IMG/VR virus record: IMGVR_UViG_3300023174_000042
Span: 1 to 64,000 of that record
Direction: 5' to 3' (one strand)
DNA: 64,000 nucleotides
Shown piece after piece: positions 3,791-51,928 of this stretch. Each line of letters opens with the position of its first letter. Positions within the stretch are counted from its first letter, which is position 1. Made by a program: the position numbers and the translations under genes. Below the pieces are notes generated by a model. The model did no database searches. It worked only from the letters and a program-made list of their open reading frames with translations, and was not told where the DNA came from.

Positions 3791-5533
3791 TTAAGGTAAT
3801 TCGTCTAAAATATTAATATTAATAATGTTTTGATTAAAATAATCAAGGTTTAAAATATCATTTTGCCAATTTTGTAATTCAGGAGTTTCTGTATTCCACC
3901 TTGGAGTCCTTGCGGATACTATTGTTCTTTCATGTTCCAAACTTTTGAAGGTTGATTCTTGCACAATAGTTCTACCATTACGATATTTTTTTGTCATCTT
4001 TGGTAACTTCAATGTTCCAACTTTATACATAAGATTTATATTTGCTAGTTGTATTTGAGCAACCTGTGAAAACTCTATAGATGGCATTTGATTAAATTTT
4101 GCTCTTTCTTGAACATTCAATATTTCATTTTGTCTATATTGATATTCAACAGTAATTCTATCATCGCCATCACGAGAGTCTTTACGAATTGAAAATATTA
4201 AACAATCCGGTCTTTCTGAATAACCTCGAACACAGTTTCTTTGATGTTGTGATTCTTTTTCATAGTCCATAGTCTTTCTTAAAAGAACAGGATAATAAGT
4301 TTCACCTTCGTGTTCAATGGGGTTTTCTAAACTATCAACATCACCATAAAATCTTTCAACTTCACCTTTTCTGTACGATTGTAAAAGACGACTAAATTCT
4401 TCATGTTCTAAGTTGAAACTGCTAATGTTTGTAAATTTAAACTTAACATCTTCTCCCAAATTATTAAGGTCTTTTTTTAACTCTAAATGGTCCAATAATG
4501 TCATAAAATTTCTATCATCAAAATGATTTATAATGTTTAAAATTTTATCTTTTTCTTTTGGTAGTAATGGTATTAACAACTTGTTTTTCATCCACAGATG
4601 GTTTTCATAAAAACAATCGTAGTATCTGCCCATTTTATTTTTTTCTAGTAGTTGCGGATAAGGACTATTAGAAAAAAATTCATCAAAAATTTTATTATCA
4701 ATTTTATTAAATCTATCGATACCAAGAAGTTTGTAGAAAAAATTAAGTCGGTTAAAATCAACCCATTCAATTTCGTTTAAAATCTTTTTAACTTTCGAAC
4801 CTTTTAAATTTAGTTTTTTCATAATTGAATCGACCAAATTCATATCTGATGATTTTAAATCTTTTTTTGGAATAAAAACATTAGTGAATTTTTTCCAAGT
4901 GTTTGGAATTTTAATGCCGTTCACCAAGTAGTATGTTAAACTATAAAATGACTCAGCAGAGTCCCAAGAAAAATTTTGTGGATTTTCCATTCCCATTTTA
5001 TCCCATATTTTTTCTAAAAAGAAAATAAAATGATTTTCAGGTTTAACACTTTCATCAATATGAACACCTCTTAAAAAACCTTGAACTGCGCTAAAAGTTG
5101 GATTAACTTTCATACGTGCTCCAATTTTTCGTTTTTTCTTTGTGATAAGTGTTCCTGAGTAAAACAATTTAGTTTTGAAATTAAATGAAAAATATTCTGT
5201 TGTTTTTCTTTCAACAAAAAACTTACCTCCAACTCTTCTTTGTTTTGTGTATAGTTGATACTTTAAAGAAATTTTATTTTCACTTTCTTCAATAAAAAAT
5301 CTATATCTAACTCTATATACTGAAGCGCAAGGATTTCCATAATGTTTAACAAAATCATCTTCAGAAAATAGTTGGGTGTCGGTATAAAATTTTTCTTTGT
5401 TTTTTGTGATATGAACTGACTCATAACTGTTATTATGTTTTGAATCAATATCACAGAAGTTTTTATAAAGTTCAACTCTGTAATTCTTTTTTTCGATAAA
5501 CTTATGAAATGTTTTTCCTTCTACTTCTAACAT
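3791..5533 (-). CDS. PcfJ-like domain protein
   Basis: C-terminal LRKTMDYEKESQHQRNCVRGY...IFSIR...ITVEY fits the PcfJ-like pattern; TATCTTTG 4 nt upstream of ATG. Confidence 0.65.
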   Translation of the reverse strand: MLEVEGKTFHKFIEKKNYRVELYKNFCDIDSKHNNSYESVHITKNKEKFYTDTQLFSEDDFVKHYGNPCASVYRVRYRFFIEESENKISLKYQLYTKQRRVGGKFFVERKTTEYFSFNFKTKLFYSGTLITKKKRKIGARMKVNPTFSAVQGFLRGVHIDESVKPENHFIFFLEKIWDKMGMENPQNFSWDSAESFYSLTYYLVNGIKIPNTWKKFTNVFIPKKDLKSSDMNLVDSIMKKLNLKGSKVKKILNEIEWVDFNRLNFFYKLLGIDRFNKIDNKIFDEFFSNSPYPQLLEKNKMGRYYDCFYENHLWMKNKLLIPLLPKEKDKILNIINHFDDRNFMTLLDHLELKKDLNNLGEDVKFKFTNISSFNLEHEEFSRLLQSYRKGEVERFYGDVDSLENPIEHEGETYYPVLLRKTMDYEKESQHQRNCVRGYSERPDCLIFSIRKDSRDGDDRITVEYQYRQNEILNVQERAKFNQMPSIEFSQVAQIQLANINLMYKVGTLKLPKMTKKYRNGRTIVQESTFKSLEHERTIVSARTPRWNTETPELQNWQNDILNLDYFNQNIININILDELP

Positions 5534-46118: not shown

Positions 46119-46702
46119 ACGTCTTCTTGTCTTGATGATACTATTTTACCCCATTTTGATTTAAATTTTTCGTAATAGGATTGTATTTTACCAATCATTT
46201 CTAAATATTGTTGATCTATTTTAACCATCTGTCCATTAACATAGATGCCATTAGGTTCATTAATTGTGTAAAAAAACTCCAAATTTAATTCTAAAATTTT
46301 TCCACTCCATTCAACATTGTCAGGAAAAACATTTAATTTGCCAAAATCAACCAACTCTGCAACTTGATTTCTAAACTCATCAACACTTTCAACAAAAGCA
46401 GTTTTTTCGTCTGTTGTTAATTGGGTATCGGCCTTTGTTTTCCCGTGTAATACGATGATGTTTCCTTGTATTCTAAACGCCTTTTGTTTGTCTCTTGGTG
46501 TTCCAATATCGTCAGAGTCTTTTGATTCTGAACTTTTTTCGGGGTCTTTTTTTGTATCGATGGTTAAATCAACCTCTTCTTCTTGTTCTAAAATTAGACC
46601 ATATTGTTTTCTGATTTCACTTTTGGAACTTTCGTTGATGTTGGCATTAAGAACTTTTCTTGATGCTTCAATCAATTTTTTTATTTCATCGTAATTATTC
46701 AT
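46115..46702 (-). CDS. leader-bearing hypothetical protein
   Basis: NINE, LILEQE sites. Confidence 0.7.
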   Translation of the reverse strand: MNNYDEIKKLIEASRKVLNANINESSKSEIRKQYGLILEQEEEVDLTIDTKKDPEKSSESKDSDDIGTPRDKQKAFRIQGNIIVLHGKTKADTQLTTDEKTAFVESVDEFRNQVAELVDFGKLNVFPDNVEWSGKILELNLEFFYTINEPNGIYVNGQMVKIDQQYLEMIGKIQSYYEKFKSKWGKIVSSRQEDV

Positions 46703-47288
46703 TTTTTAACAAATTATTAAATCTTTCAAAATCAAATGCCGGACTTACGTCTGTGGCGTATTCATCAAAGTTGGATCTTGTTATAATACCCAAGTAAGTT
46801 TCCGATCCTTTTACTTTGGTATTATGTCCTATACATTTCAAGTTTATATTATGTTTTTTTGACAACTCGATACAAAGTTTAGCTGTATTTTTCAACTGAA
46901 TTTCTGTATATGGGTGCCAAAAAAAATAATCTCTCCACTTCTTTTCTACAACTTTTTTCTTATAAATATTGCCGATCCAGTTTATGTGTTGATTTTTTAA
47001 AGGTTGTTTTTCTAACCAACCAAAATTTTCTAAAGAAATTACTATGGATTTGTAATTTATTGTGATATTATTAAAATAATTAGAATTAGTTTTATCTTCT
47101 AAAGTTTGTATAACTTTTCCATCCTGTCCTACAATGTAGTGTGGTAATTTTTGTGGTTTTCCATTATATCTTGTTTTTAAAGAAACAACATAGTCTAACA
47201 AATTTCTTGACGTATGGACCAAAACAATTTGATTTTTATTTTCAATTTTTGAGAAATTTGTTTCAAACAATTGGTCGATAATTTCCAT
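46695..47288 (-). CDS. N-acetylmuramoyl-L-alanine amidase (Amidase_2-like), probable endolysin
   Basis: IVLVHT, PHYIVGQDG, SIVISLEN, YTEIQL, IGH, DVSP. Confidence 0.75.
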   Translation of the reverse strand: MEIIDQLFETNFSKIENKNQIVLVHTSRNLLDYVVSLKTRYNGKPQKLPHYIVGQDGKVIQTLEDKTNSNYFNNITINYKSIVISLENFGWLEKQPLKNQHINWIGNIYKKKVVEKKWRDYFFWHPYTEIQLKNTAKLCIELSKKHNINLKCIGHNTKVKGSETYLGIITRSNFDEYATDVSPAFDFERFNNLLKNE

Positions 47289-47291
47289 ACT

Positions 47292-48623
47292 TTATTTTTT
47301 ATAAGATAAAACCCTTCTATTTGAATCTTTATTTTTTTTTAAAAAATTTACTTCATCTATTATATTTCCTTCTTGGTCCAAGATTTCACCGCTTTCTCTA
47401 ACATAGTAATTAACAGGAACCTCAACAATTTTTTCAACTTCTTTAATAACCTCAACAGGAACCTCAACAATTTTTTCAACTTCTTTAATAACCTCAACAG
47501 GAATTTCGCGAACAACCTCAACCAATCTATCAACAGGAACCTCACGAACAACCTCAACCAATCTATCAACAGGAACCTCAACAATTTTTTCAACTTCTTT
47601 GATAACTTCAACAGGAACCTCAACAATTTTTTCAACTTCCACAATTCTGTCAATTTCAAATGGAATTTCTATTGGAACTTCAACAATTTTTTCAATTATT
47701 TCAGGCTCAACTTGGGGGGTATCTTGGGAGTCATCTAAGGTTAAAAAACTTTCAGGAACTTCAACTTCGTCTTCTTCAAAGACTTCTTTAATAACAGGTT
47801 TAATTTCTTCATCCTCTTCTTTTCTTCTATATTTTTTAAATGCCTGATTTGTTGATATAACAAGAGCAATTGCCAATGGATCAAAAACAAATATTAAAGT
47901 TAAAATAAAAAAGTTTGCGGTTTTTTTAACATCCCATCCGGTGATTTCACTAAGATATTTAATTGCCCCCAGTTCCCCTGATTCAATCTCTTTAGATGAT
48001 ATATCCAATATTTGAATATCCAAATTGGTAATGCTGTCATTTAGATTATCAATCTTTTTACTTAAAGTGTCTCTTGATTTTTGAGCGATGTTTAATTGTT
48101 GTTGAAATGCTCTTCTATTTCCATCATTTGCCTTTGTTAAAACTTGTCCTGACCTTCTATCAATAGTTTGAGTTGTTGTGCTTGTAGAAAGGGATGTTCT
48201 TAAACTTGTGATGTCTTTATCCAACCCATTTTTTTCTTTTTGGTATTCTTTTTTAATCTCCTCAAATCTTTGTTTCTTTACTTCAATATTTTTAATTTTT
48301 TTATTGTTGATTTCAAGACCAGCAATACTCTTTTGAAACCCTGTTGCCAAAAGTCCATAAATACCGATTGAAGTCAAAATTGATAACGTGACAAGAGCAA
48401 TGGTTAAATATAACTTTAATACACCATATATCTTGTTCCAAGCGTCATGAAGATAAGTGGCAATTGATATTTTAGAAATCTCCAAAAAAGATCCCATAAT
48501 GATTACAGGTATTGAAACTCCTGAAAAAATAATTGAAAGTCCGTATACACTATAATATGCTGCCGTTCCCGATAGTCCAAGTGCACAAAACAATAATAAC
48601 CAAGGTAAAAATTTACTATTCAT
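47292..48623 (-). CDS. multi-TM coiled-coil protein with VEVP/KEVEK repeats
   Basis: Three N-terminal TMs, coiled coil, fourth TM, alveolin-like repeats; TATTTATA at 48640-48647. Confidence 0.75.
   Translation of the reverse strand: MNSKFLPWLLLFCALGLSGTAAYYSVYGLSIIFSGVSIPVIIMGSFLEISKISIATYLHDAWNKIYGVLKLYLTIALVTLSILTSIGIYGLLATGFQKSIAGLEINNKKIKNIEVKKQRFEEIKKEYQKEKNGLDKDITSLRTSLSTSTTTQTIDRRSGQVLTKANDGNRRAFQQQLNIAQKSRDTLSKKIDNLNDSITNLDIQILDISSKEIESGELGAIKYLSEITGWDVKKTANFFILTLIFVFDPLAIALVISTNQAFKKYRRKEEDEEIKPVIKEVFEEDEVEVPESFLTLDDSQDTPQVEPEIIEKIVEVPIEIPFEIDRIVEVEKIVEVPVEVIKEVEKIVEVPVDRLVEVVREVPVDRLVEVVREIPVEVIKEVEKIVEVPVEVIKEVEKIVEVPVNYYVRESGEILDQEGNIIDEVNFLKKNKDSNRRVLSYKK
47410..47700 (-). repeat. 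coding tandem repeats: 42-bp (VEVIKEVEKIVEVP) x3 and 36-bp (VDRLVEVVRE[V/I]P) x2
   Basis: Near-identical DNA units visible directly. Confidence 0.9.
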
Positions 48624-48689
48624 TTAAATTCTTCTTAAATATAAATATCAAAATAACTAAATAGATTGAAAATATAAACTCTATAACAA

Positions 48690-48888
48690 ATAAAACCCCC
48701 CACCGATATCAGTGGGGGAGTGTAGTTTCATCTCACCATATAGATAAGATTGAGGATTTTCACCTTGAGAACCTCGTGTCTCATTCCGCCGAGTTGTTAG
48801 GGTAATCTCGGTTCAACCCTTTTTTTTCGGTCCAATTCTAAAAATTCAAACCCGACAAACTTAATTGATTATATCTATCGTCGTTTAT
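48690..48888 (-). ncRNA. candidate structured non-coding RNA B with two potential H-type pseudoknots
   Basis: Consensus promoter upstream, terminator downstream, no ORF over 18 codons seen; core related to element A. Confidence 0.45.
48692..48718 (-). terminator. intrinsic terminator
   Basis: CCCCCAC...GTGGGGG stem plus U tract on the minus strand. Confidence 0.75.
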
Positions 48889-48892
48889 TATA

Positions 48893-48923
48893 CAAAGATA
48901 AAACAAATATTTAATTTACCAAA
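48893..48923 (-). promoter_or_regulatory. Bacteroidota sigma70-type promoter
   Basis: TTTGG-N18-TATCTTTG. Confidence 0.75.
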
Positions 48924-48929
48924 ACTTTT

Positions 48930-49730
48930 TTATAAATAATCGAATAATTCTGAAGAATCATTTCTAAGTCTTCGAAGGGCCTTTTCTTTGATTTGTCGAA
49001 CACGTTCTTTGGTTAGACCAAAATCAGATCCAATATCTTCTAAAGTTCTTGGAGTTCCAGTAAGTCCAAAATAATCACCAACAATCGACTTTTCACGATC
49101 ATCCAAAACATCCAAAAGTTTTAATAATTTGTCTTTAAGAATGTCTTTTGTATCAAATATCGCGTCCGGAAGTTCGGCATCCTTATTTGCGATCATATCC
49201 AACAAAGTATCACCATCTTCATTTATATTCATATCAAGATCAATCATAGATGGAAGAGAAGCAAACTTATCTTCAAGTTTTTTTCCGGTTTGCTCAACCT
49301 CTTTTTTTGCCTTATGAAGATCCTGAACCACATTAACGGGAAGACGAATTGTTCTTGAGTTATCATTTAACGATTGGATGATAGATTGTTTTACCCACCA
49401 TACCGCATATGATATAAATCTCAAATCTTTGTTCCAATCAAAGTTTTTAATTGCCTTCATTAAACCCAAATTTCCTTCAGCAATCAAGTCAGATAAATCA
49501 AGTCCCTGATTTTGATATTGTTTTGCCACCGTAATTACAAAACGAAGATTTCCTGTTAAAAGTTCTTCTTCAACTTTTTGTTTTTCTTTTAGTTCAATAT
49601 TATCAGACTTCATTTTTACCGCCAGTTCGCGTTCTCTTTCTGCGGTCATTACCTTAATTTTTCGAATATCTTTAAGGTAGTGATAAATTTCATCCTGATT
49701 AATTGGGGATCCTGCGCTTTTTTCTTTCAT
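48930..49730 (-). CDS. rpoD: RpoD-like sigma70 factor lacking region 1.1
   Basis: YLKDI (1.2), NLRFVITVAKQY, DLIAEGNLGL, RFISYAVWW, RTIRLP, region 4 TLEDIG..FGLTKERVRQI. Confidence 0.9.
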   Translation of the reverse strand: MKEKSAGSPINQDEIYHYLKDIRKIKVMTAERERELAVKMKSDNIELKEKQKVEEELLTGNLRFVITVAKQYQNQGLDLSDLIAEGNLGLMKAIKNFDWNKDLRFISYAVWWVKQSIIQSLNDNSRTIRLPVNVVQDLHKAKKEVEQTGKKLEDKFASLPSMIDLDMNINEDGDTLLDMIANKDAELPDAIFDTKDILKDKLLKLLDVLDDREKSIVGDYFGLTGTPRTLEDIGSDFGLTKERVRQIKEKALRRLRNDSSELFDYL

Positions 49731-50473: not shown

Positions 50474-51928
50474 TTAACATAATTTATATATATTTTCATA
50501 CTTAAATACTTTAGTACGATATACAGTATTAATAGAATGAATTGTACGTATATAAAAATCCTTATCGAAATTTGTATCAGTATTTAAATAGAAATCCTCC
50601 GAGTCAATCATATTTATGTTAGAAATAACAATATTTTTACAAATATTTTCACAATCATTCACCTTATTAATTCTCGATAATGAATGATCTGTAAATATAT
50701 CACAACCTTTTTCTTCTTGTTGTATAAAAATATATTTTCTATTAACATTTTGTAATTTATCGGATTCAACTAATCCGTGATATGTTGAGTTTGACCCCGC
50801 ACACCAATCAAGAATAATATCACCATCGTTAGTGAATGATGTAATAATGTCCCTCATTAATATAATTGATTTAGGAGTGTTAAACGTTTTTTCACCGTAT
50901 AGTTTCTTCAACACATCAGTTGCCTGTGTATTTCCATATTCAGTTTTATCCATAATGGTCTTCATAGGTTGGAATGTTTTTACTTTTTCCATGTAGTTGA
51001 TAACACCGTTATTTTCATGTAAAACATCATATGGTTTATTTTTATTTAAAATAGTCTCATATGTTGGTACCCATCTACCCCACTTTTCTCCATATTTTGG
51101 AAATATTACTTTATGAGTTTTAGAGTATTTCTCCTCAATATTTTTAACATATTCACTAATTTTATTATTCATATCATCAGTGTATATTTTTGTTTTACTG
51201 TAGTCTTTACAGACATTATTAACAAACTTTTTTAGTAAAAGATATTCATTCTTACTTATTGTTGAGATTTTATTAGTTCCTTTTTCAATTAAGAATGGGT
51301 AAAATTGTCCTTGTCTATCGCAAACTAACTTTGCATTATATGCCAACAGACTTCTAGGTTTTACGTCTTTACCCTTGTCTTTACTTTCATTCAAAACACC
51401 TTCACCATATTCAAGTAAATTAATATTTTTAGCACAAACCACTAAATATTCATTAGTCGTTACTAAATCTTTTTTATTCCTTCTTCCACCACCACCTCTA
51501 TTTGACACAACAGTTGCAGTTGTTAATACATTTTTTTCACCAAAAACATCAACACATAAATTTTCCAAATTTCTTTTCTCATTGTGATCAATAGAAATAA
51601 CCATAACCCCATTATCGGAAAGTAGTTCTCTAACAATAATTAATCTAGGTAACATCCAAGAAATCCAATCTGAATGATAATTTAATGAATCGGTAGTATT
51701 AAATGTATCATTATAAATGAAATCCTCATTTCCGGTGTTATAAGGTACATCAGCATATGCTAATTTTATTTTTCCCTTATAAATGGAACTTAACCCTATT
51801 AATGATTGTAAATTATCACCTTTAACACCTAAAACATCAAATTCATCACTAAAATTAATGTTTGGAATTTTAACACCGTCTAAAATTTCTTTGTACTCGT
51901 TTGGTACTGTATTTTTATAAACTACCAT
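50474..51928 (-). CDS. mod: type III Mod-like DNA methyltransferase with variant motifs
   Basis: GDNL..L, YADVPYNTG (DPPY variant), SWMLPRL, ISID, FNTPKS, ILDWCAGSNST (DFFAGSGTT variant). Confidence 0.75.
   Translation of the reverse strand: MVVYKNTVPNEYKEILDGVKIPNINFSDEFDVLGVKGDNLQSLIGLSSIYKGKIKLAYADVPYNTGNEDFIYNDTFNTTDSLNYHSDWISWMLPRLIIVRELLSDNGVMVISIDHNEKRNLENLCVDVFGEKNVLTTATVVSNRGGGGRRNKKDLVTTNEYLVVCAKNINLLEYGEGVLNESKDKGKDVKPRSLLAYNAKLVCDRQGQFYPFLIEKGTNKISTISKNEYLLLKKFVNNVCKDYSKTKIYTDDMNNKISEYVKNIEEKYSKTHKVIFPKYGEKWGRWVPTYETILNKNKPYDVLHENNGVINYMEKVKTFQPMKTIMDKTEYGNTQATDVLKKLYGEKTFNTPKSIILMRDIITSFTNDGDIILDWCAGSNSTYHGLVESDKLQNVNRKYIFIQQEEKGCDIFTDHSLSRINKVNDCENICKNIVISNINMIDSEDFYLNTDTNFDKDFYIRTIHSINTVYRTKVFKYENIYKLC

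What the first reader, a model, noticed from the sequence alone, without database searches (positions are those of the whole stretch)
48690..48923. Candidate ncRNA B with two tandem potential pseudoknots, just downstream of the sigma gene
Seen (minus strand): full consensus promoter, then AGGGU-UGAA-CCGAG-AUU-ACCCU-AACAA-CUCGG (two interleaved 5-bp stems, 48789-48820) and UGAGA-CAC-GAGG-U-UCUCA-AGGUGAAAAU-CCUC (48752-48782), ending in a terminator; about 200 nt. It also contains an 18-codon ORF (MRHEVLKVKILNLIYMVR). Inference: a structured RNA (ribozyme, decoy or regulator) or a micro-peptide mRNA. I do not recognise the family.
Basis: partly seen in the sequence, partly recalled or inferred. 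Interest (0 to 1): 0.62.

Follow-up and report, generated by a model that had tools for sequence, protein, structure and literature searches.

The report
Orphan pseudoknot sRNA of jumbo phages
This is a real, conserved small structured RNA gene of a previously undescribed family in freshwater jumbo phages; it begins with a pseudoknot supported by covariation, and in about half of related phages it sits tail-to-tail with a small RelE-like putative RNase gene that this phage lacks.

Summary
The window is the first 64 kb of a 272-kb IMG/VR jumbo phage. The RNA is real. A 99-nt core (48725-48823, minus strand) plus an intrinsic terminator recurs in at least 80 distinct phage loci. It matches no Rfam family and occurs once in this genome.

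Covariation supports one H-type pseudoknot, three hairpins and the terminator. The second pseudoknot helix exists in six sequence versions. The 18-codon ORF is not conserved.

The promoter is of the Bacteroidota type (TTTG, 19 nt, TAnnTTTG), not a full E. coli consensus. In many relatives it lies 16-31 nt upstream of the core, and in some the RNA is antisense to its neighbours. It is therefore a stand-alone sRNA gene, not a leader.

In 44 of 80 loci a 130-150-aa protein ("P140") is encoded convergently, ending at the RNA terminator. Its resemblance to RelE/BECR RNases is weak. Nearly every P140 gene examined has a convergent sRNA, of several classes. This phage carries the RNA alone, and it is still under purifying selection.

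Best guess: an RNA partner or antidote of P140-type RNases, orphaned here. Function is untested.

The parts
48920..48923 (-). -33 element TTTG of a Bacteroidota-type promoter
   Evidence: Read. It lies 19 nt upstream of the -7 box. The same TTTG-N19-TAnnTTTG layout precedes the core in at least 20 other contexts.
48893..48900 (-). -7 element TATCTTTG (TAnnTTTG); TATAAT at 48887-48892 overlaps its 3' side
   Evidence: The motif TATCTTTG recurs in the window. No E. coli-type -35 is present.
48824..48886 (-). Non-conserved 5' leader with two predicted local hairpins. It contains a second TAnnTTTG-like box at 48856-48863.
   Evidence: Fold. Shared only with L021 and partly with L003, L005 and L028. 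In most relatives the core starts 10-20 nt after the promoter or directly after the sigma stop codon.
48725..48823 (-). Conserved 99-nt RNA core (type A)
   Evidence: Covariance model R1 scores it at 118 bits, E = 1.6e-24, and finds a single copy in the 272-kb genome. Alignments A1 and A2 hold 62 distinct sequences.
48799..48820 (-). Pseudoknot helix S1: AGGGU (48816-48820) pairs with ACCCU (48799-48803)
   Evidence: GGG/CCC is invariant. The closing pair is A-U in 33, U-A in 20 and unpaired in 9 sequences. The L200 lineage has U-A in place of one G-C.
48789..48811 (-). Pseudoknot helix S2: CCGAG (48807-48811) pairs with CUCGG (48789-48793), interleaved with S1
   Evidence: Six sequence versions keep the helix: CCGAG/CUCGG, CCGGG/CUCGG, UAUCUAA/UUAGAUA, UUGGUUAA/UUAACCGA, UCGGUUAA/UUAAUCGA and UUGGUUAG/CUAAUCAA.
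48766..48783 (-). Hairpin P3 (UGAGA/UCUCA) with the conserved loop motif ACGAR
   Evidence: Four covarying pairs: GAGA/UCUC, GGUG/CACC, GGGA/UCCC. An inner C-G to G-C swap is also seen.
48753..48765 (-).
   Evidence: Closing pair is AU 30, GU 20, GC 9; C-G and U-A occur in L224 and L223. The stem is lengthened in L098 and L105.
48730..48750 (-). Hairpin P5 (AUCUUA/UGAGAU) with a variable loop
   Evidence: Four covarying pairs and 94.6% of cells paired.
48686..48719 (-). Intrinsic terminator: 10-bp G+C-rich hairpin (48696-48719) plus U-tract. It also looks terminator-like on the + strand.
   Evidence: Scan. Seven covarying pairs. In relatives the stop codon of the convergent P140 gene abuts this U-tract.
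48728..48784 (-). 18-codon ORF plus stop; not a conserved coding frame
   Evidence: ATG is present in 42 of 62 sequences and the frame is intact in 28 of 62. Substitutions follow base pairing, not codons.
48930..49730 (-). Upstream neighbour: phage sigma-70-family factor (266 aa)
   Evidence: Pfam Sigma70_r2, r4 and r1_2; PHROG 351.
47292..48623 (-). Downstream neighbour: 443-aa membrane protein with acidic C-terminal repeats, followed by an Amidase_2 gene (46695-47288)
   Evidence: No P140 gene lies between the terminator and this gene (only a 62-nt gap), nor anywhere in the genome.

Best explanation
The locus is a stand-alone gene for a small structured RNA of a new family, called type A here.

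Shown: the RNA sits behind a host-type (Bacteroidota sigma-A-like) promoter. In this phage a roughly 60-nt non-conserved leader is followed by a 99-nt conserved core and a terminator, about 190 nt in all. The core consists of a 5' H-type pseudoknot with near-invariant loops, then three hairpins. The RNA-coding strand is the minus strand.

Inferred: the RNA acts in trans as the partner of a small RelE/BECR-like putative endoribonuclease, P140. In 44 of 80 related loci P140 is encoded tail-to-tail with the RNA and shares its terminator. The most likely role is an antidote, inhibitor or decoy that binds or occupies P140, which is type III toxin-antitoxin-like logic. Control through the shared 3' hairpin is a second possibility.

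This phage has lost P140 while its nearest relative keeps it, and it retains the RNA as an orphan. Because the orphan is still under purifying selection, it must be useful alone. It could, for example, neutralise P140-type RNases of co-infecting relatives, or act on a host factor.
For: Structure and family: 62 distinct homologues with 94% of cells paired, 17 pairs with double changes and 0 of 500 shuffles reaching the observed values. Pseudoknot helix S2 occurs in six compensated versions.

Strand: frequent G-U pairs on this strand would be A-C mismatches on the other.

Independent gene: a TTTG-N19-TAnnTTTG promoter lies 16-31 nt upstream of the core in at least 20 contexts. In L082, L093 and L213 the RNA lies antisense between two genes. 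In L132, L105 and L098 it is followed by a convergent gene.

Link to P140: the RNA-P140 pair is kept tail-to-tail in at least six unrelated backbones. The P140 3' end lies a median of 135 nt after the core start. Seventeen of 19 loci fetched through eight P140 proteins, not through the RNA, carry a convergent promoter-sRNA-terminator unit; L208 and L211 were not examined. The units are of type A, a divergent type A, type C or type D.

P140 as an RNase: about 20 of the 50 best structural rows are RelE, ParE, HigB, YoeB, YafQ, BrnT, RegB or Cami1. The nearest named clusters by language-model features are PBECR2, PBECR3 and EndoU. One member hits DUF4258 at E = 0.0011. E, H, R, T and Q residues are invariant or nearly so. 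No adjacent protein antitoxin candidate is conserved.

Orphan under selection: the core of P140-less loci is 81-94% identical to the window, against 52-63% at third codon positions of the adjacent sigma gene. Compensatory changes continue within P140-less clades. L021 (sigma 94% identical, RNA core 100% identical) still has P140.
Against: The fold evidence for P140 is weak: Z is at most 5.6, Foldseek finds nothing at E <= 0.001, and the feature scores of about 0.8 are in the range that shuffled proteins reach.

Of 80 loci, 36 carry the RNA without P140, and the RNA is equally conserved there. P140 may therefore be an accessory to the RNA rather than its target.

In L212, L114 and L164 the convergent partner of P140 is a different RNA (type C), and type A lies on the other side of the gene.

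A P140 homologue in the 635-kb uncultured phage LR745206.1 has no sRNA, only a convergent S1-domain ORF and a terminator.

RNA class does not track P140 subfamily cleanly: the L002 protein, with a type B RNA, is closer to proteins that accompany type A RNAs.

P140 was not found in 401 Flavobacteriales genomes, so a host-encoded target of that kind has no support.
Confidence: 0.4

Rival explanations
1. A trans-acting sRNA or decoy that works on a host or phage factor unrelated to P140, for example sequestering an RNA-binding protein or RNase early in infection. The adjacency to P140 would reflect only two small accessory genes sharing a bidirectional terminator in a hypervariable island between the sigma gene and the lysis-like genes.
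For: Of 80 loci, 36 carry the RNA alone, with undiminished conservation. Three related jumbo genomes at least 93% complete lack it altogether, so it is accessory. The island also holds variable DNA methyltransferases and other sRNA classes. Type A and type C RNAs coexist around one P140 gene in L212. One P140 homologue has no sRNA.
Against: The RNA-P140 tail-to-tail pair is retained across backbones that share almost no other flanking gene. Nearly every P140 locus examined has some convergent sRNA. That is more than chance adjacency would predict.
Confidence: 0.3
2. A cis-acting ligand- or protein-sensing element (riboswitch or attenuator). Its pseudoknot aptamer would control read-through of its own terminator, either into the downstream membrane and amidase genes or, in cassette loci, antisense into P140.
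For: The pseudoknot loops and the P4 loop are near-invariant, as in small pseudoknot aptamers. A terminator follows the core in nearly all copies. Read-through would run antisense into P140 in 44 loci.
Against: No alternative antiterminator pairing between core and terminator was seen in the aligned sequences; this rests on inspection, not a formal search. The downstream same-strand gene is not constant, and in L082, L093, L098 and L132 there is none. L105, L132 and L169 lack the terminator. No riboswitch model in Rfam matches, even at E <= 10.
Confidence: 0.12
3. A 3'-end element of the sigma mRNA (a stabiliser, processing site or self-cleaving ribozyme). It would release or protect the upstream message.
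For: In many relatives the core begins 1-15 nt after the sigma stop codon with no promoter of its own. In L003-type loci it follows a 184-aa ORF in the same way. The conserved pseudoknot could be a catalytic or nuclease-blocking fold.
Against: In at least 20 contexts it has its own promoter and no upstream same-strand gene. It is absent from one third of sigma-bearing relatives, some with intact 100-nt intergenic regions. No ribozyme family matches.
Confidence: 0.08
4. An mRNA for the 18-residue peptide MRHEVLKVKILNLIYMVR.
For: The ORF exists, and 25 of 62 homologues keep an 18-codon frame.
Against: The start codon is missing in 20 of 62 sequences, and premature stops occur in others. Substitutions are compensatory for helices P3-P5.
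Confidence: 0.01

Closest known systems
Type III toxin-antitoxin systems (ToxI/ToxN, CptIN, TenpIN) and phage 'pseudo-ToxI' (from my own knowledge of the literature)
   Same: A structured, pseudoknot-forming RNA is encoded next to a small endoribonuclease-like protein with no protein antitoxin. The RNA can occur alone in a phage, as an orphan antidote would.
   Different: There are no tandem repeats. The RNA is convergent with the protein gene, not upstream and co-directional. The protein resembles RelE/BECR weakly, not ToxN/Kid. Neither toxicity nor binding has been tested.
Convergent type I toxin-antitoxin pairs of Bacillus prophages (txpA/RatA, bsrG/SR4; my own knowledge)
   Same: An sRNA and a protein gene are transcribed toward each other and overlap at their 3' ends.
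   Different: The overlap here is only the shared terminator hairpin. The protein is a 130-150-aa soluble alpha/beta protein, not a short hydrophobic peptide. The RNA has an elaborate conserved fold that is kept even without the protein gene.
Phage T4 RegB and the RelE/ParE/BECR RNases, including PBECR domains of phage polyvalent proteins
   Same: P140 is phage-encoded, of RegB size, and gives weak structural and feature matches to this fold class.
   Different: There is no significant sequence or Foldseek match. No RNA partner is known to me for RegB or for RelE-type toxins.
Small H-type pseudoknot riboswitch aptamers (preQ1-I, SAM-II/V, fluoride, guanidine-III)
   Same: A compact H-type pseudoknot with highly conserved loops, followed by an intrinsic terminator.
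   Different: None of these Rfam models matches. No switching helix was seen. There is no constant regulated gene. Three further conserved hairpins follow the pseudoknot.
Lambda pR'-6S-tR' leader and HK022 put RNAs (my own knowledge)
   Same: A short promoter-proximal structured transcript ends at a terminator just upstream of lysis-type genes.
   Different: The element is absent from a third of close relatives. It is often antisense to, or convergent with, its neighbours, and it is not tied to the lysis genes.

Membership tests
Any Rfam 15 family | Score at or above the family's gathering threshold | tested here: not met
   There are 0 matches in the whole window at gathering thresholds. At E <= 10 only sub-threshold matches appear (SprX 23.7 of 80 bits, L10 leader 23.7 of 44), driven by the terminator.
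H-type RNA pseudoknot | Two interleaved helices, each maintained by compensatory change | tested here: met
   S2 occurs in six sequence versions of 5-8 bp. S1 has an A-U/U-A closing pair (33 and 20 sequences) and one G-C to U-A change. The slid-partner controls drop to 20-61% of cells paired.
   Only 72% of cells are paired. The pair at columns 54-75 is unpaired in 48 of 62 sequences, with no double changes.
Stand-alone bacterial-type sRNA gene | Own promoter and own intrinsic terminator, independent of neighbour orientation | tested here: met
   Promoter motif. Terminator. Antisense or convergent placements. Transcription itself has not been observed.
Type III antitoxin RNA (ToxI-like) | Tandem array of short direct repeats | tested here: not met
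   There is no tandem repeat in the RNA, and it is a single copy.
Type III antitoxin RNA (ToxI-like) | RNA gene upstream of and co-directional with the toxin gene, separated by a terminator | tested here: not met
   P140 is convergent in 44 of 44 paired loci and on the same strand in none.
Type III antitoxin RNA (ToxI-like) | The RNA binds and inhibits its cognate endoribonuclease | not testable with these tools
   It needs co-expression and binding assays. Complex prediction handles proteins only.
Type I antitoxin RNA | Extended antisense complementarity to the toxin mRNA; small hydrophobic toxin | tested here: not met
   The overlap is limited to the terminator hairpin, since the P140 stop codon abuts the U-tract. 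P140 is 127-153 aa and is predicted as a soluble alpha/beta fold.
Riboswitch | Aptamer coupled to an expression platform with mutually exclusive pairing, and a constant class of regulated genes | tested here: not met
   No antiterminator was seen by inspecting the alignment. Downstream genes vary or are absent on that strand. Ligand binding cannot be tested here.
RelE/ParE/BECR-fold RNase (for the partner protein P140, which is absent from the window) | Significant sequence-profile or structural match to the fold | tested here: inconclusive
   AF2 model pLDDT is 77. Foldseek finds nothing at E <= 0.001. VIA-align gives Z of 3.4-4.5 to many RelE-type toxins, against a noise level of about Z 7-8. 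The Atlas feature search points to PBECR2, PBECR3 and EndoU at a score of 0.8. DUF4258 is hit by 1 of 21 members at E = 0.0011. PADLOC, PHROGs and PDB sequence searches give nothing relevant.
Protein-coding small ORF | Conserved start codon, frame and codon-like substitution pattern | tested here: not met
   ATG is present in 42 of 62 sequences and the frame is intact in 28 of 62.

The most novel reading that the evidence does not exclude
The sRNA-P140 cassette is a new kind of toxin-antidote or RNase-immunity module. A RelE/BECR-fold phage endoribonuclease would be held in check by a structured RNA rather than by a protein. The RNA classes would be interchangeable (type A pseudoknot RNA, type B, and type C with two identical octaloop hairpins). 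The window's copy would be an orphan 'immunity RNA', kept to survive the RNases of co-infecting relatives.
Probability: 0.2. Interest if true: 0.85.

Novelty: new variant of a known kind. Interest (0 to 1): 0.66.

Why it matters
It adds a well-supported, unannotated structured RNA family, with a pseudoknot supported by covariation, to the small set of phage-encoded non-coding RNAs. It also shows that the RNA travels with a small RelE-like protein gene as a two-gene cassette through unrelated freshwater phage genomes. To my knowledge RelE/BECR RNases are known only with protein antidotes. If the RNA controls that protein, this would be an RNA-based antidote for that fold and a clear case of orphan RNA immunity in phage-phage competition. 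If it does not, an abundant, highly conserved orphan sRNA that is apparently expressed from a host-type promoter in jumbo phages is still a tractable entry point to RNA-based host takeover in Bacteroidota. sRNA biology in that phylum is poorly known.

Tried and rejected
Searches that found nothing:
- Rfam at gathering and at permissive thresholds found nothing usable.
- ARAGORN found no tRNA or tmRNA.
- blastn of the intergenic region against GenBank phages found no match.
- The covariance model found no second copy in the genome. It found no copy in about 30 sigma-bearing relatives or in three near-complete related genomes.
- One exact-pattern scan of 185,579 species genomes gave a single hit, L195. 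It lies on a 5.7-kb contig of a Crocinitomicaceae MAG, next to a hydrolase with a T9SS sorting tail.
- The model was not found in 150 other genomes of that family. That search scored only 27 candidates per genome.
- P140 was not found in 401 genomes of that order or in the window's own genome.

Tools that could not be used:
- The search for related loci with the P140 alignment failed for lack of a conserved stretch.
- The catalogue paper of 10,006 viral candidate RNAs (PMC10690425) could not be checked for this motif, because no supplement is held.

Ideas considered and dropped:
- The micro-peptide reading.
- Stop-codon readthrough or frameshift stimulation. The distance from the sigma stop to the pseudoknot ranges from 1 nt to more than 2 kb.
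- HDV-like and other ribozyme topologies. No hairpins are nested inside the pseudoknot, and there is no Rfam hit.
- Homology of the 184-aa ORF of L003 to P140 (hhalign probability 0.3%).
- A G39-C51 / A39-U51 tertiary pair. It is seen but rests on a single lineage split.

Full report
**Setting.** The window is bases 1-64000 of a 272,576-bp IMG/VR virus record, a jumbo phage estimated 93% complete. The finding lies in the 306-nt gap between a sigma-70-family gene (48930-49730, minus strand; Pfam regions 2, 4 and 1.2) and a 443-aa membrane protein gene (47292-48623). An Amidase_2 gene follows the membrane gene.

The recurring box TATCTTTG fits the Bacteroidota promoter consensus TTTG...TAnnTTTG, which I know from the literature. 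The only non-viral hit is on a Crocinitomicaceae MAG contig. Both point to a Bacteroidota host.

**Observation.** The 32-nt pseudoknot string is unique in the window. The region folds better than every one of its shuffles, z = -3.2. A strong terminator lies at 48696-48719. Rfam has no match.

**Homologues.**
- The sigma protein retrieved 80 related viral loci at 76-94% identity.
- blastn showed that only the part from just upstream of GGGUUGAACC to beyond the terminator is conserved. The promoter and the first 60 nt are not.
- A 15-nt pattern scan and a scan anchored on the 3' half of the core added more loci. These include divergent lineages recognised by covariance model R1.
- In all I examined more than 60 distinct sequences (alignments A1, A2, A4).

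**Structure.** On A1, 94.4% of cells are paired. Seventeen pairs show changes on both sides, no shuffle of 500 reaches these values, and slid controls fall to 41-53%.

| Element | Support |
|---|---|
| P3, P5, terminator | four, four and seven covarying pairs |
| P4 | a short hairpin whose closing pair occurs in five standard pair types |
| S1 | invariant GGG/CCC with a covarying closing pair |
| S2 | invariant among canonical copies, replaced by fully complementary 7-8-bp helices of different sequence in the L200, L272, L224/L223 and L278 lineages |

- The pseudoknot is therefore supported by covariation.
- G-U pairs fix the RNA strand as the minus strand.
- The 18-codon ORF is not conserved.

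**An independent gene.**
- In at least 20 contexts a TTTG-N19-TAnnTTTG promoter ends 16-31 nt upstream of the core. In the window and in L021 it lies 81 nt upstream.
- Where the core abuts the sigma stop codon there is no such promoter, so it is presumably co-transcribed with sigma.
- In L082, L093 and L213 the RNA is antisense to both neighbours.
- In L098, L105 and L132 a convergent gene follows it.
- It occurs once per genome.
- It is missing from about a third of sigma-bearing relatives, including three genomes at least 93% complete.

It is thus an accessory, self-contained sRNA gene, not a leader of the lysis-like genes.

**The partner gene.** Clustering of flanking ORFs revealed one family shared by otherwise unrelated contexts. 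It is a 127-153-aa protein, called P140 here, encoded convergently so that its stop codon abuts the RNA's U-tract.
- Of 80 distinct type A loci with enough downstream sequence, 44 have P140 in that arrangement, none has it on the same strand, and 36, including the window, lack it.
- Starting from eight P140 proteins rather than from the RNA, 17 of the 19 fetched loci carry a convergent promoter-sRNA-terminator unit. L208 and L211 were not examined.
- In those 17 loci the unit is type A in seven, a divergent type A in three, type C in six and type D in one. Type B accompanies P140 in L002, L004 and L020-type loci. Type C consists of two hairpins that share the octaloop UCAGAAUA.
- Exceptions matter. 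In L212, L114 and L164 the convergent partner is type C, and type A lies beyond the other end of P140. A 47%-identical homologue in LR745206.1 has no sRNA.

**What P140 is.**
- It has no significant Pfam, PHROG, PADLOC or PDB sequence match.
- It is found only as 'hypothetical protein' in 151 clusters from metagenomes.
- An AlphaFold2 model (pLDDT 77) gives no significant Foldseek hit.
- About 20 of the 50 best VIA-align rows are RelE, ParE, HigB, YoeB, YafQ, BrnT, RegB or Cami1, at Z 3.4-4.5.
- The Atlas feature search points to PBECR2, PBECR3 and EndoU clusters at a score of about 0.8.
- One member hits DUF4258 at E = 0.0011.

These three weak leads agree on a RelE/BECR-type RNase fold, but none is significant alone. 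The invariant or near-invariant residues are E15, H38, R45, T128 and Q144.

**The orphan.** P140 is absent from the window and from the whole genome. L021 has a sigma 94% identical and an RNA core 100% identical, and it still has P140.

In P140-less loci the core is 81-94% identical to the window's. Third codon positions of the adjacent sigma gene are only 52-63% identical. Compensatory changes continue within P140-less clades. The RNA is therefore selected for a function that does not need a P140 gene in cis.

**Interpretation.**
- Shown: this is a new structured sRNA family with a pseudoknot supported by covariation, a host-type promoter, a terminator, accessory distribution and a strong but not absolute genomic linkage to P140.
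- Inferred: the RNA and P140 act together. The most economical model is that the RNA is an antidote or decoy for a RelE-like RNase. Protein antitoxin candidates are missing, nearly every P140 has an sRNA, and the RNA survives alone much as orphan immunity genes do.
- I put this at about 0.4.
- The main rival, at 0.3, is a trans-acting sRNA with another target, whose adjacency to P140 is incidental to a hypervariable island.
- Riboswitch, 3'-end element or ribozyme, and micro-peptide readings are less likely, for the reasons given under rivals.

**Limits.**
- Covariation support for S2 comes from four or five lineages.
- The P140 fold assignment is tentative.
- All homologues are metagenomic.
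- I could not check whether the motif is already among the 10,006 unnamed candidates of PMC10690425.

Noticed in passing
L002:3853-3975 (+); L020:5530-5650 (+); also L004, L029, L037; a copy in L003 at about 3853-3990: A second, unrelated structured-looking RNA (type B). It sits behind the same promoter and a leader beginning ACAAAC, and it takes the place of type A convergent to P140. Long-range complementarity (GAGUAG...CUACUC, GAUAGG...CCUAUC) suggests a fold of its own.
   Followed up: partly
L203:1900-1975 (-); L207, L209, L212, L214, L215: A short type C sRNA made of two hairpins that each present the same octaloop, UCAGAAUA, closed by G-C. The same loop, or UUAGAAUA, caps the terminator hairpin of divergent type A RNAs (L200, L272, L224, L278, L082). 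It looks like a repeated protein-binding site.
   Followed up: partly
L003:4190-4744 (+); homologous C-termini upstream of the RNA in L087, L091, L094, L104, L108 and L131: A 184-aa ORF is inserted between the window-type promoter and leader and the RNA core, and its stop codon touches the core. It is not detectably related to P140 (hhalign probability 0.3%).
   Followed up: partly
window 47292-48623 (-): The 443-aa membrane protein upstream of the amidase has a conserved N-terminal 270 residues and a variable, highly acidic C-terminal array of VEVPVEVIKEVEKI-like repeats. It has no Pfam or PHROG match. It may be a lysis-associated protein.
   Followed up: no
window: 5532, 7684, 9015, 13447, 16827, 31827, 34162, 40870, 55800 and others: The box (T/C)TATCTTTG recurs and matches the Bacteroidota -7 promoter element TAnnTTTG. 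The sites look like early promoters read by the host polymerase and could be used to map early transcription units.
   Followed up: no
L195:3020-3117 (+), contig JBILIY010000085.1: A type A copy (70 bits) without an obvious terminator lies on a 5.7-kb contig binned to a Lake Mendota Crocinitomicaceae MAG. It is divergent from a PETase-like hydrolase with a T9SS sorting domain. It could be a host clue, a prophage remnant or a binning error.
   Followed up: partly
L068:3770-6353; L170:3444-6031; L090, L172, L020, L210: One to three tandem C-5 cytosine DNA methyltransferase paralogues lie directly upstream of the sRNA-P140 cassette. L082 has a Dam-type methylase next to it, and the window has an N6/N4 methylase at 50474-51928. 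The cassette sits in what looks like an anti-restriction island.
   Followed up: no
L287 (LR745206.1:315277-315651): The only GenBank phage record with a P140 homologue is a 635-kb uncultured 'huge phage'. There the gene faces an S1-domain ORF and a plain terminator, with no sRNA.
   Followed up: yes
window 48856-48863 (-): A second TAnnTTTG-like box (TAAGTTTG) lies inside the non-conserved leader, 44 nt upstream of the core and without a matching -33 TTTG. It could be a weaker internal start giving a shorter RNA.
   Followed up: no
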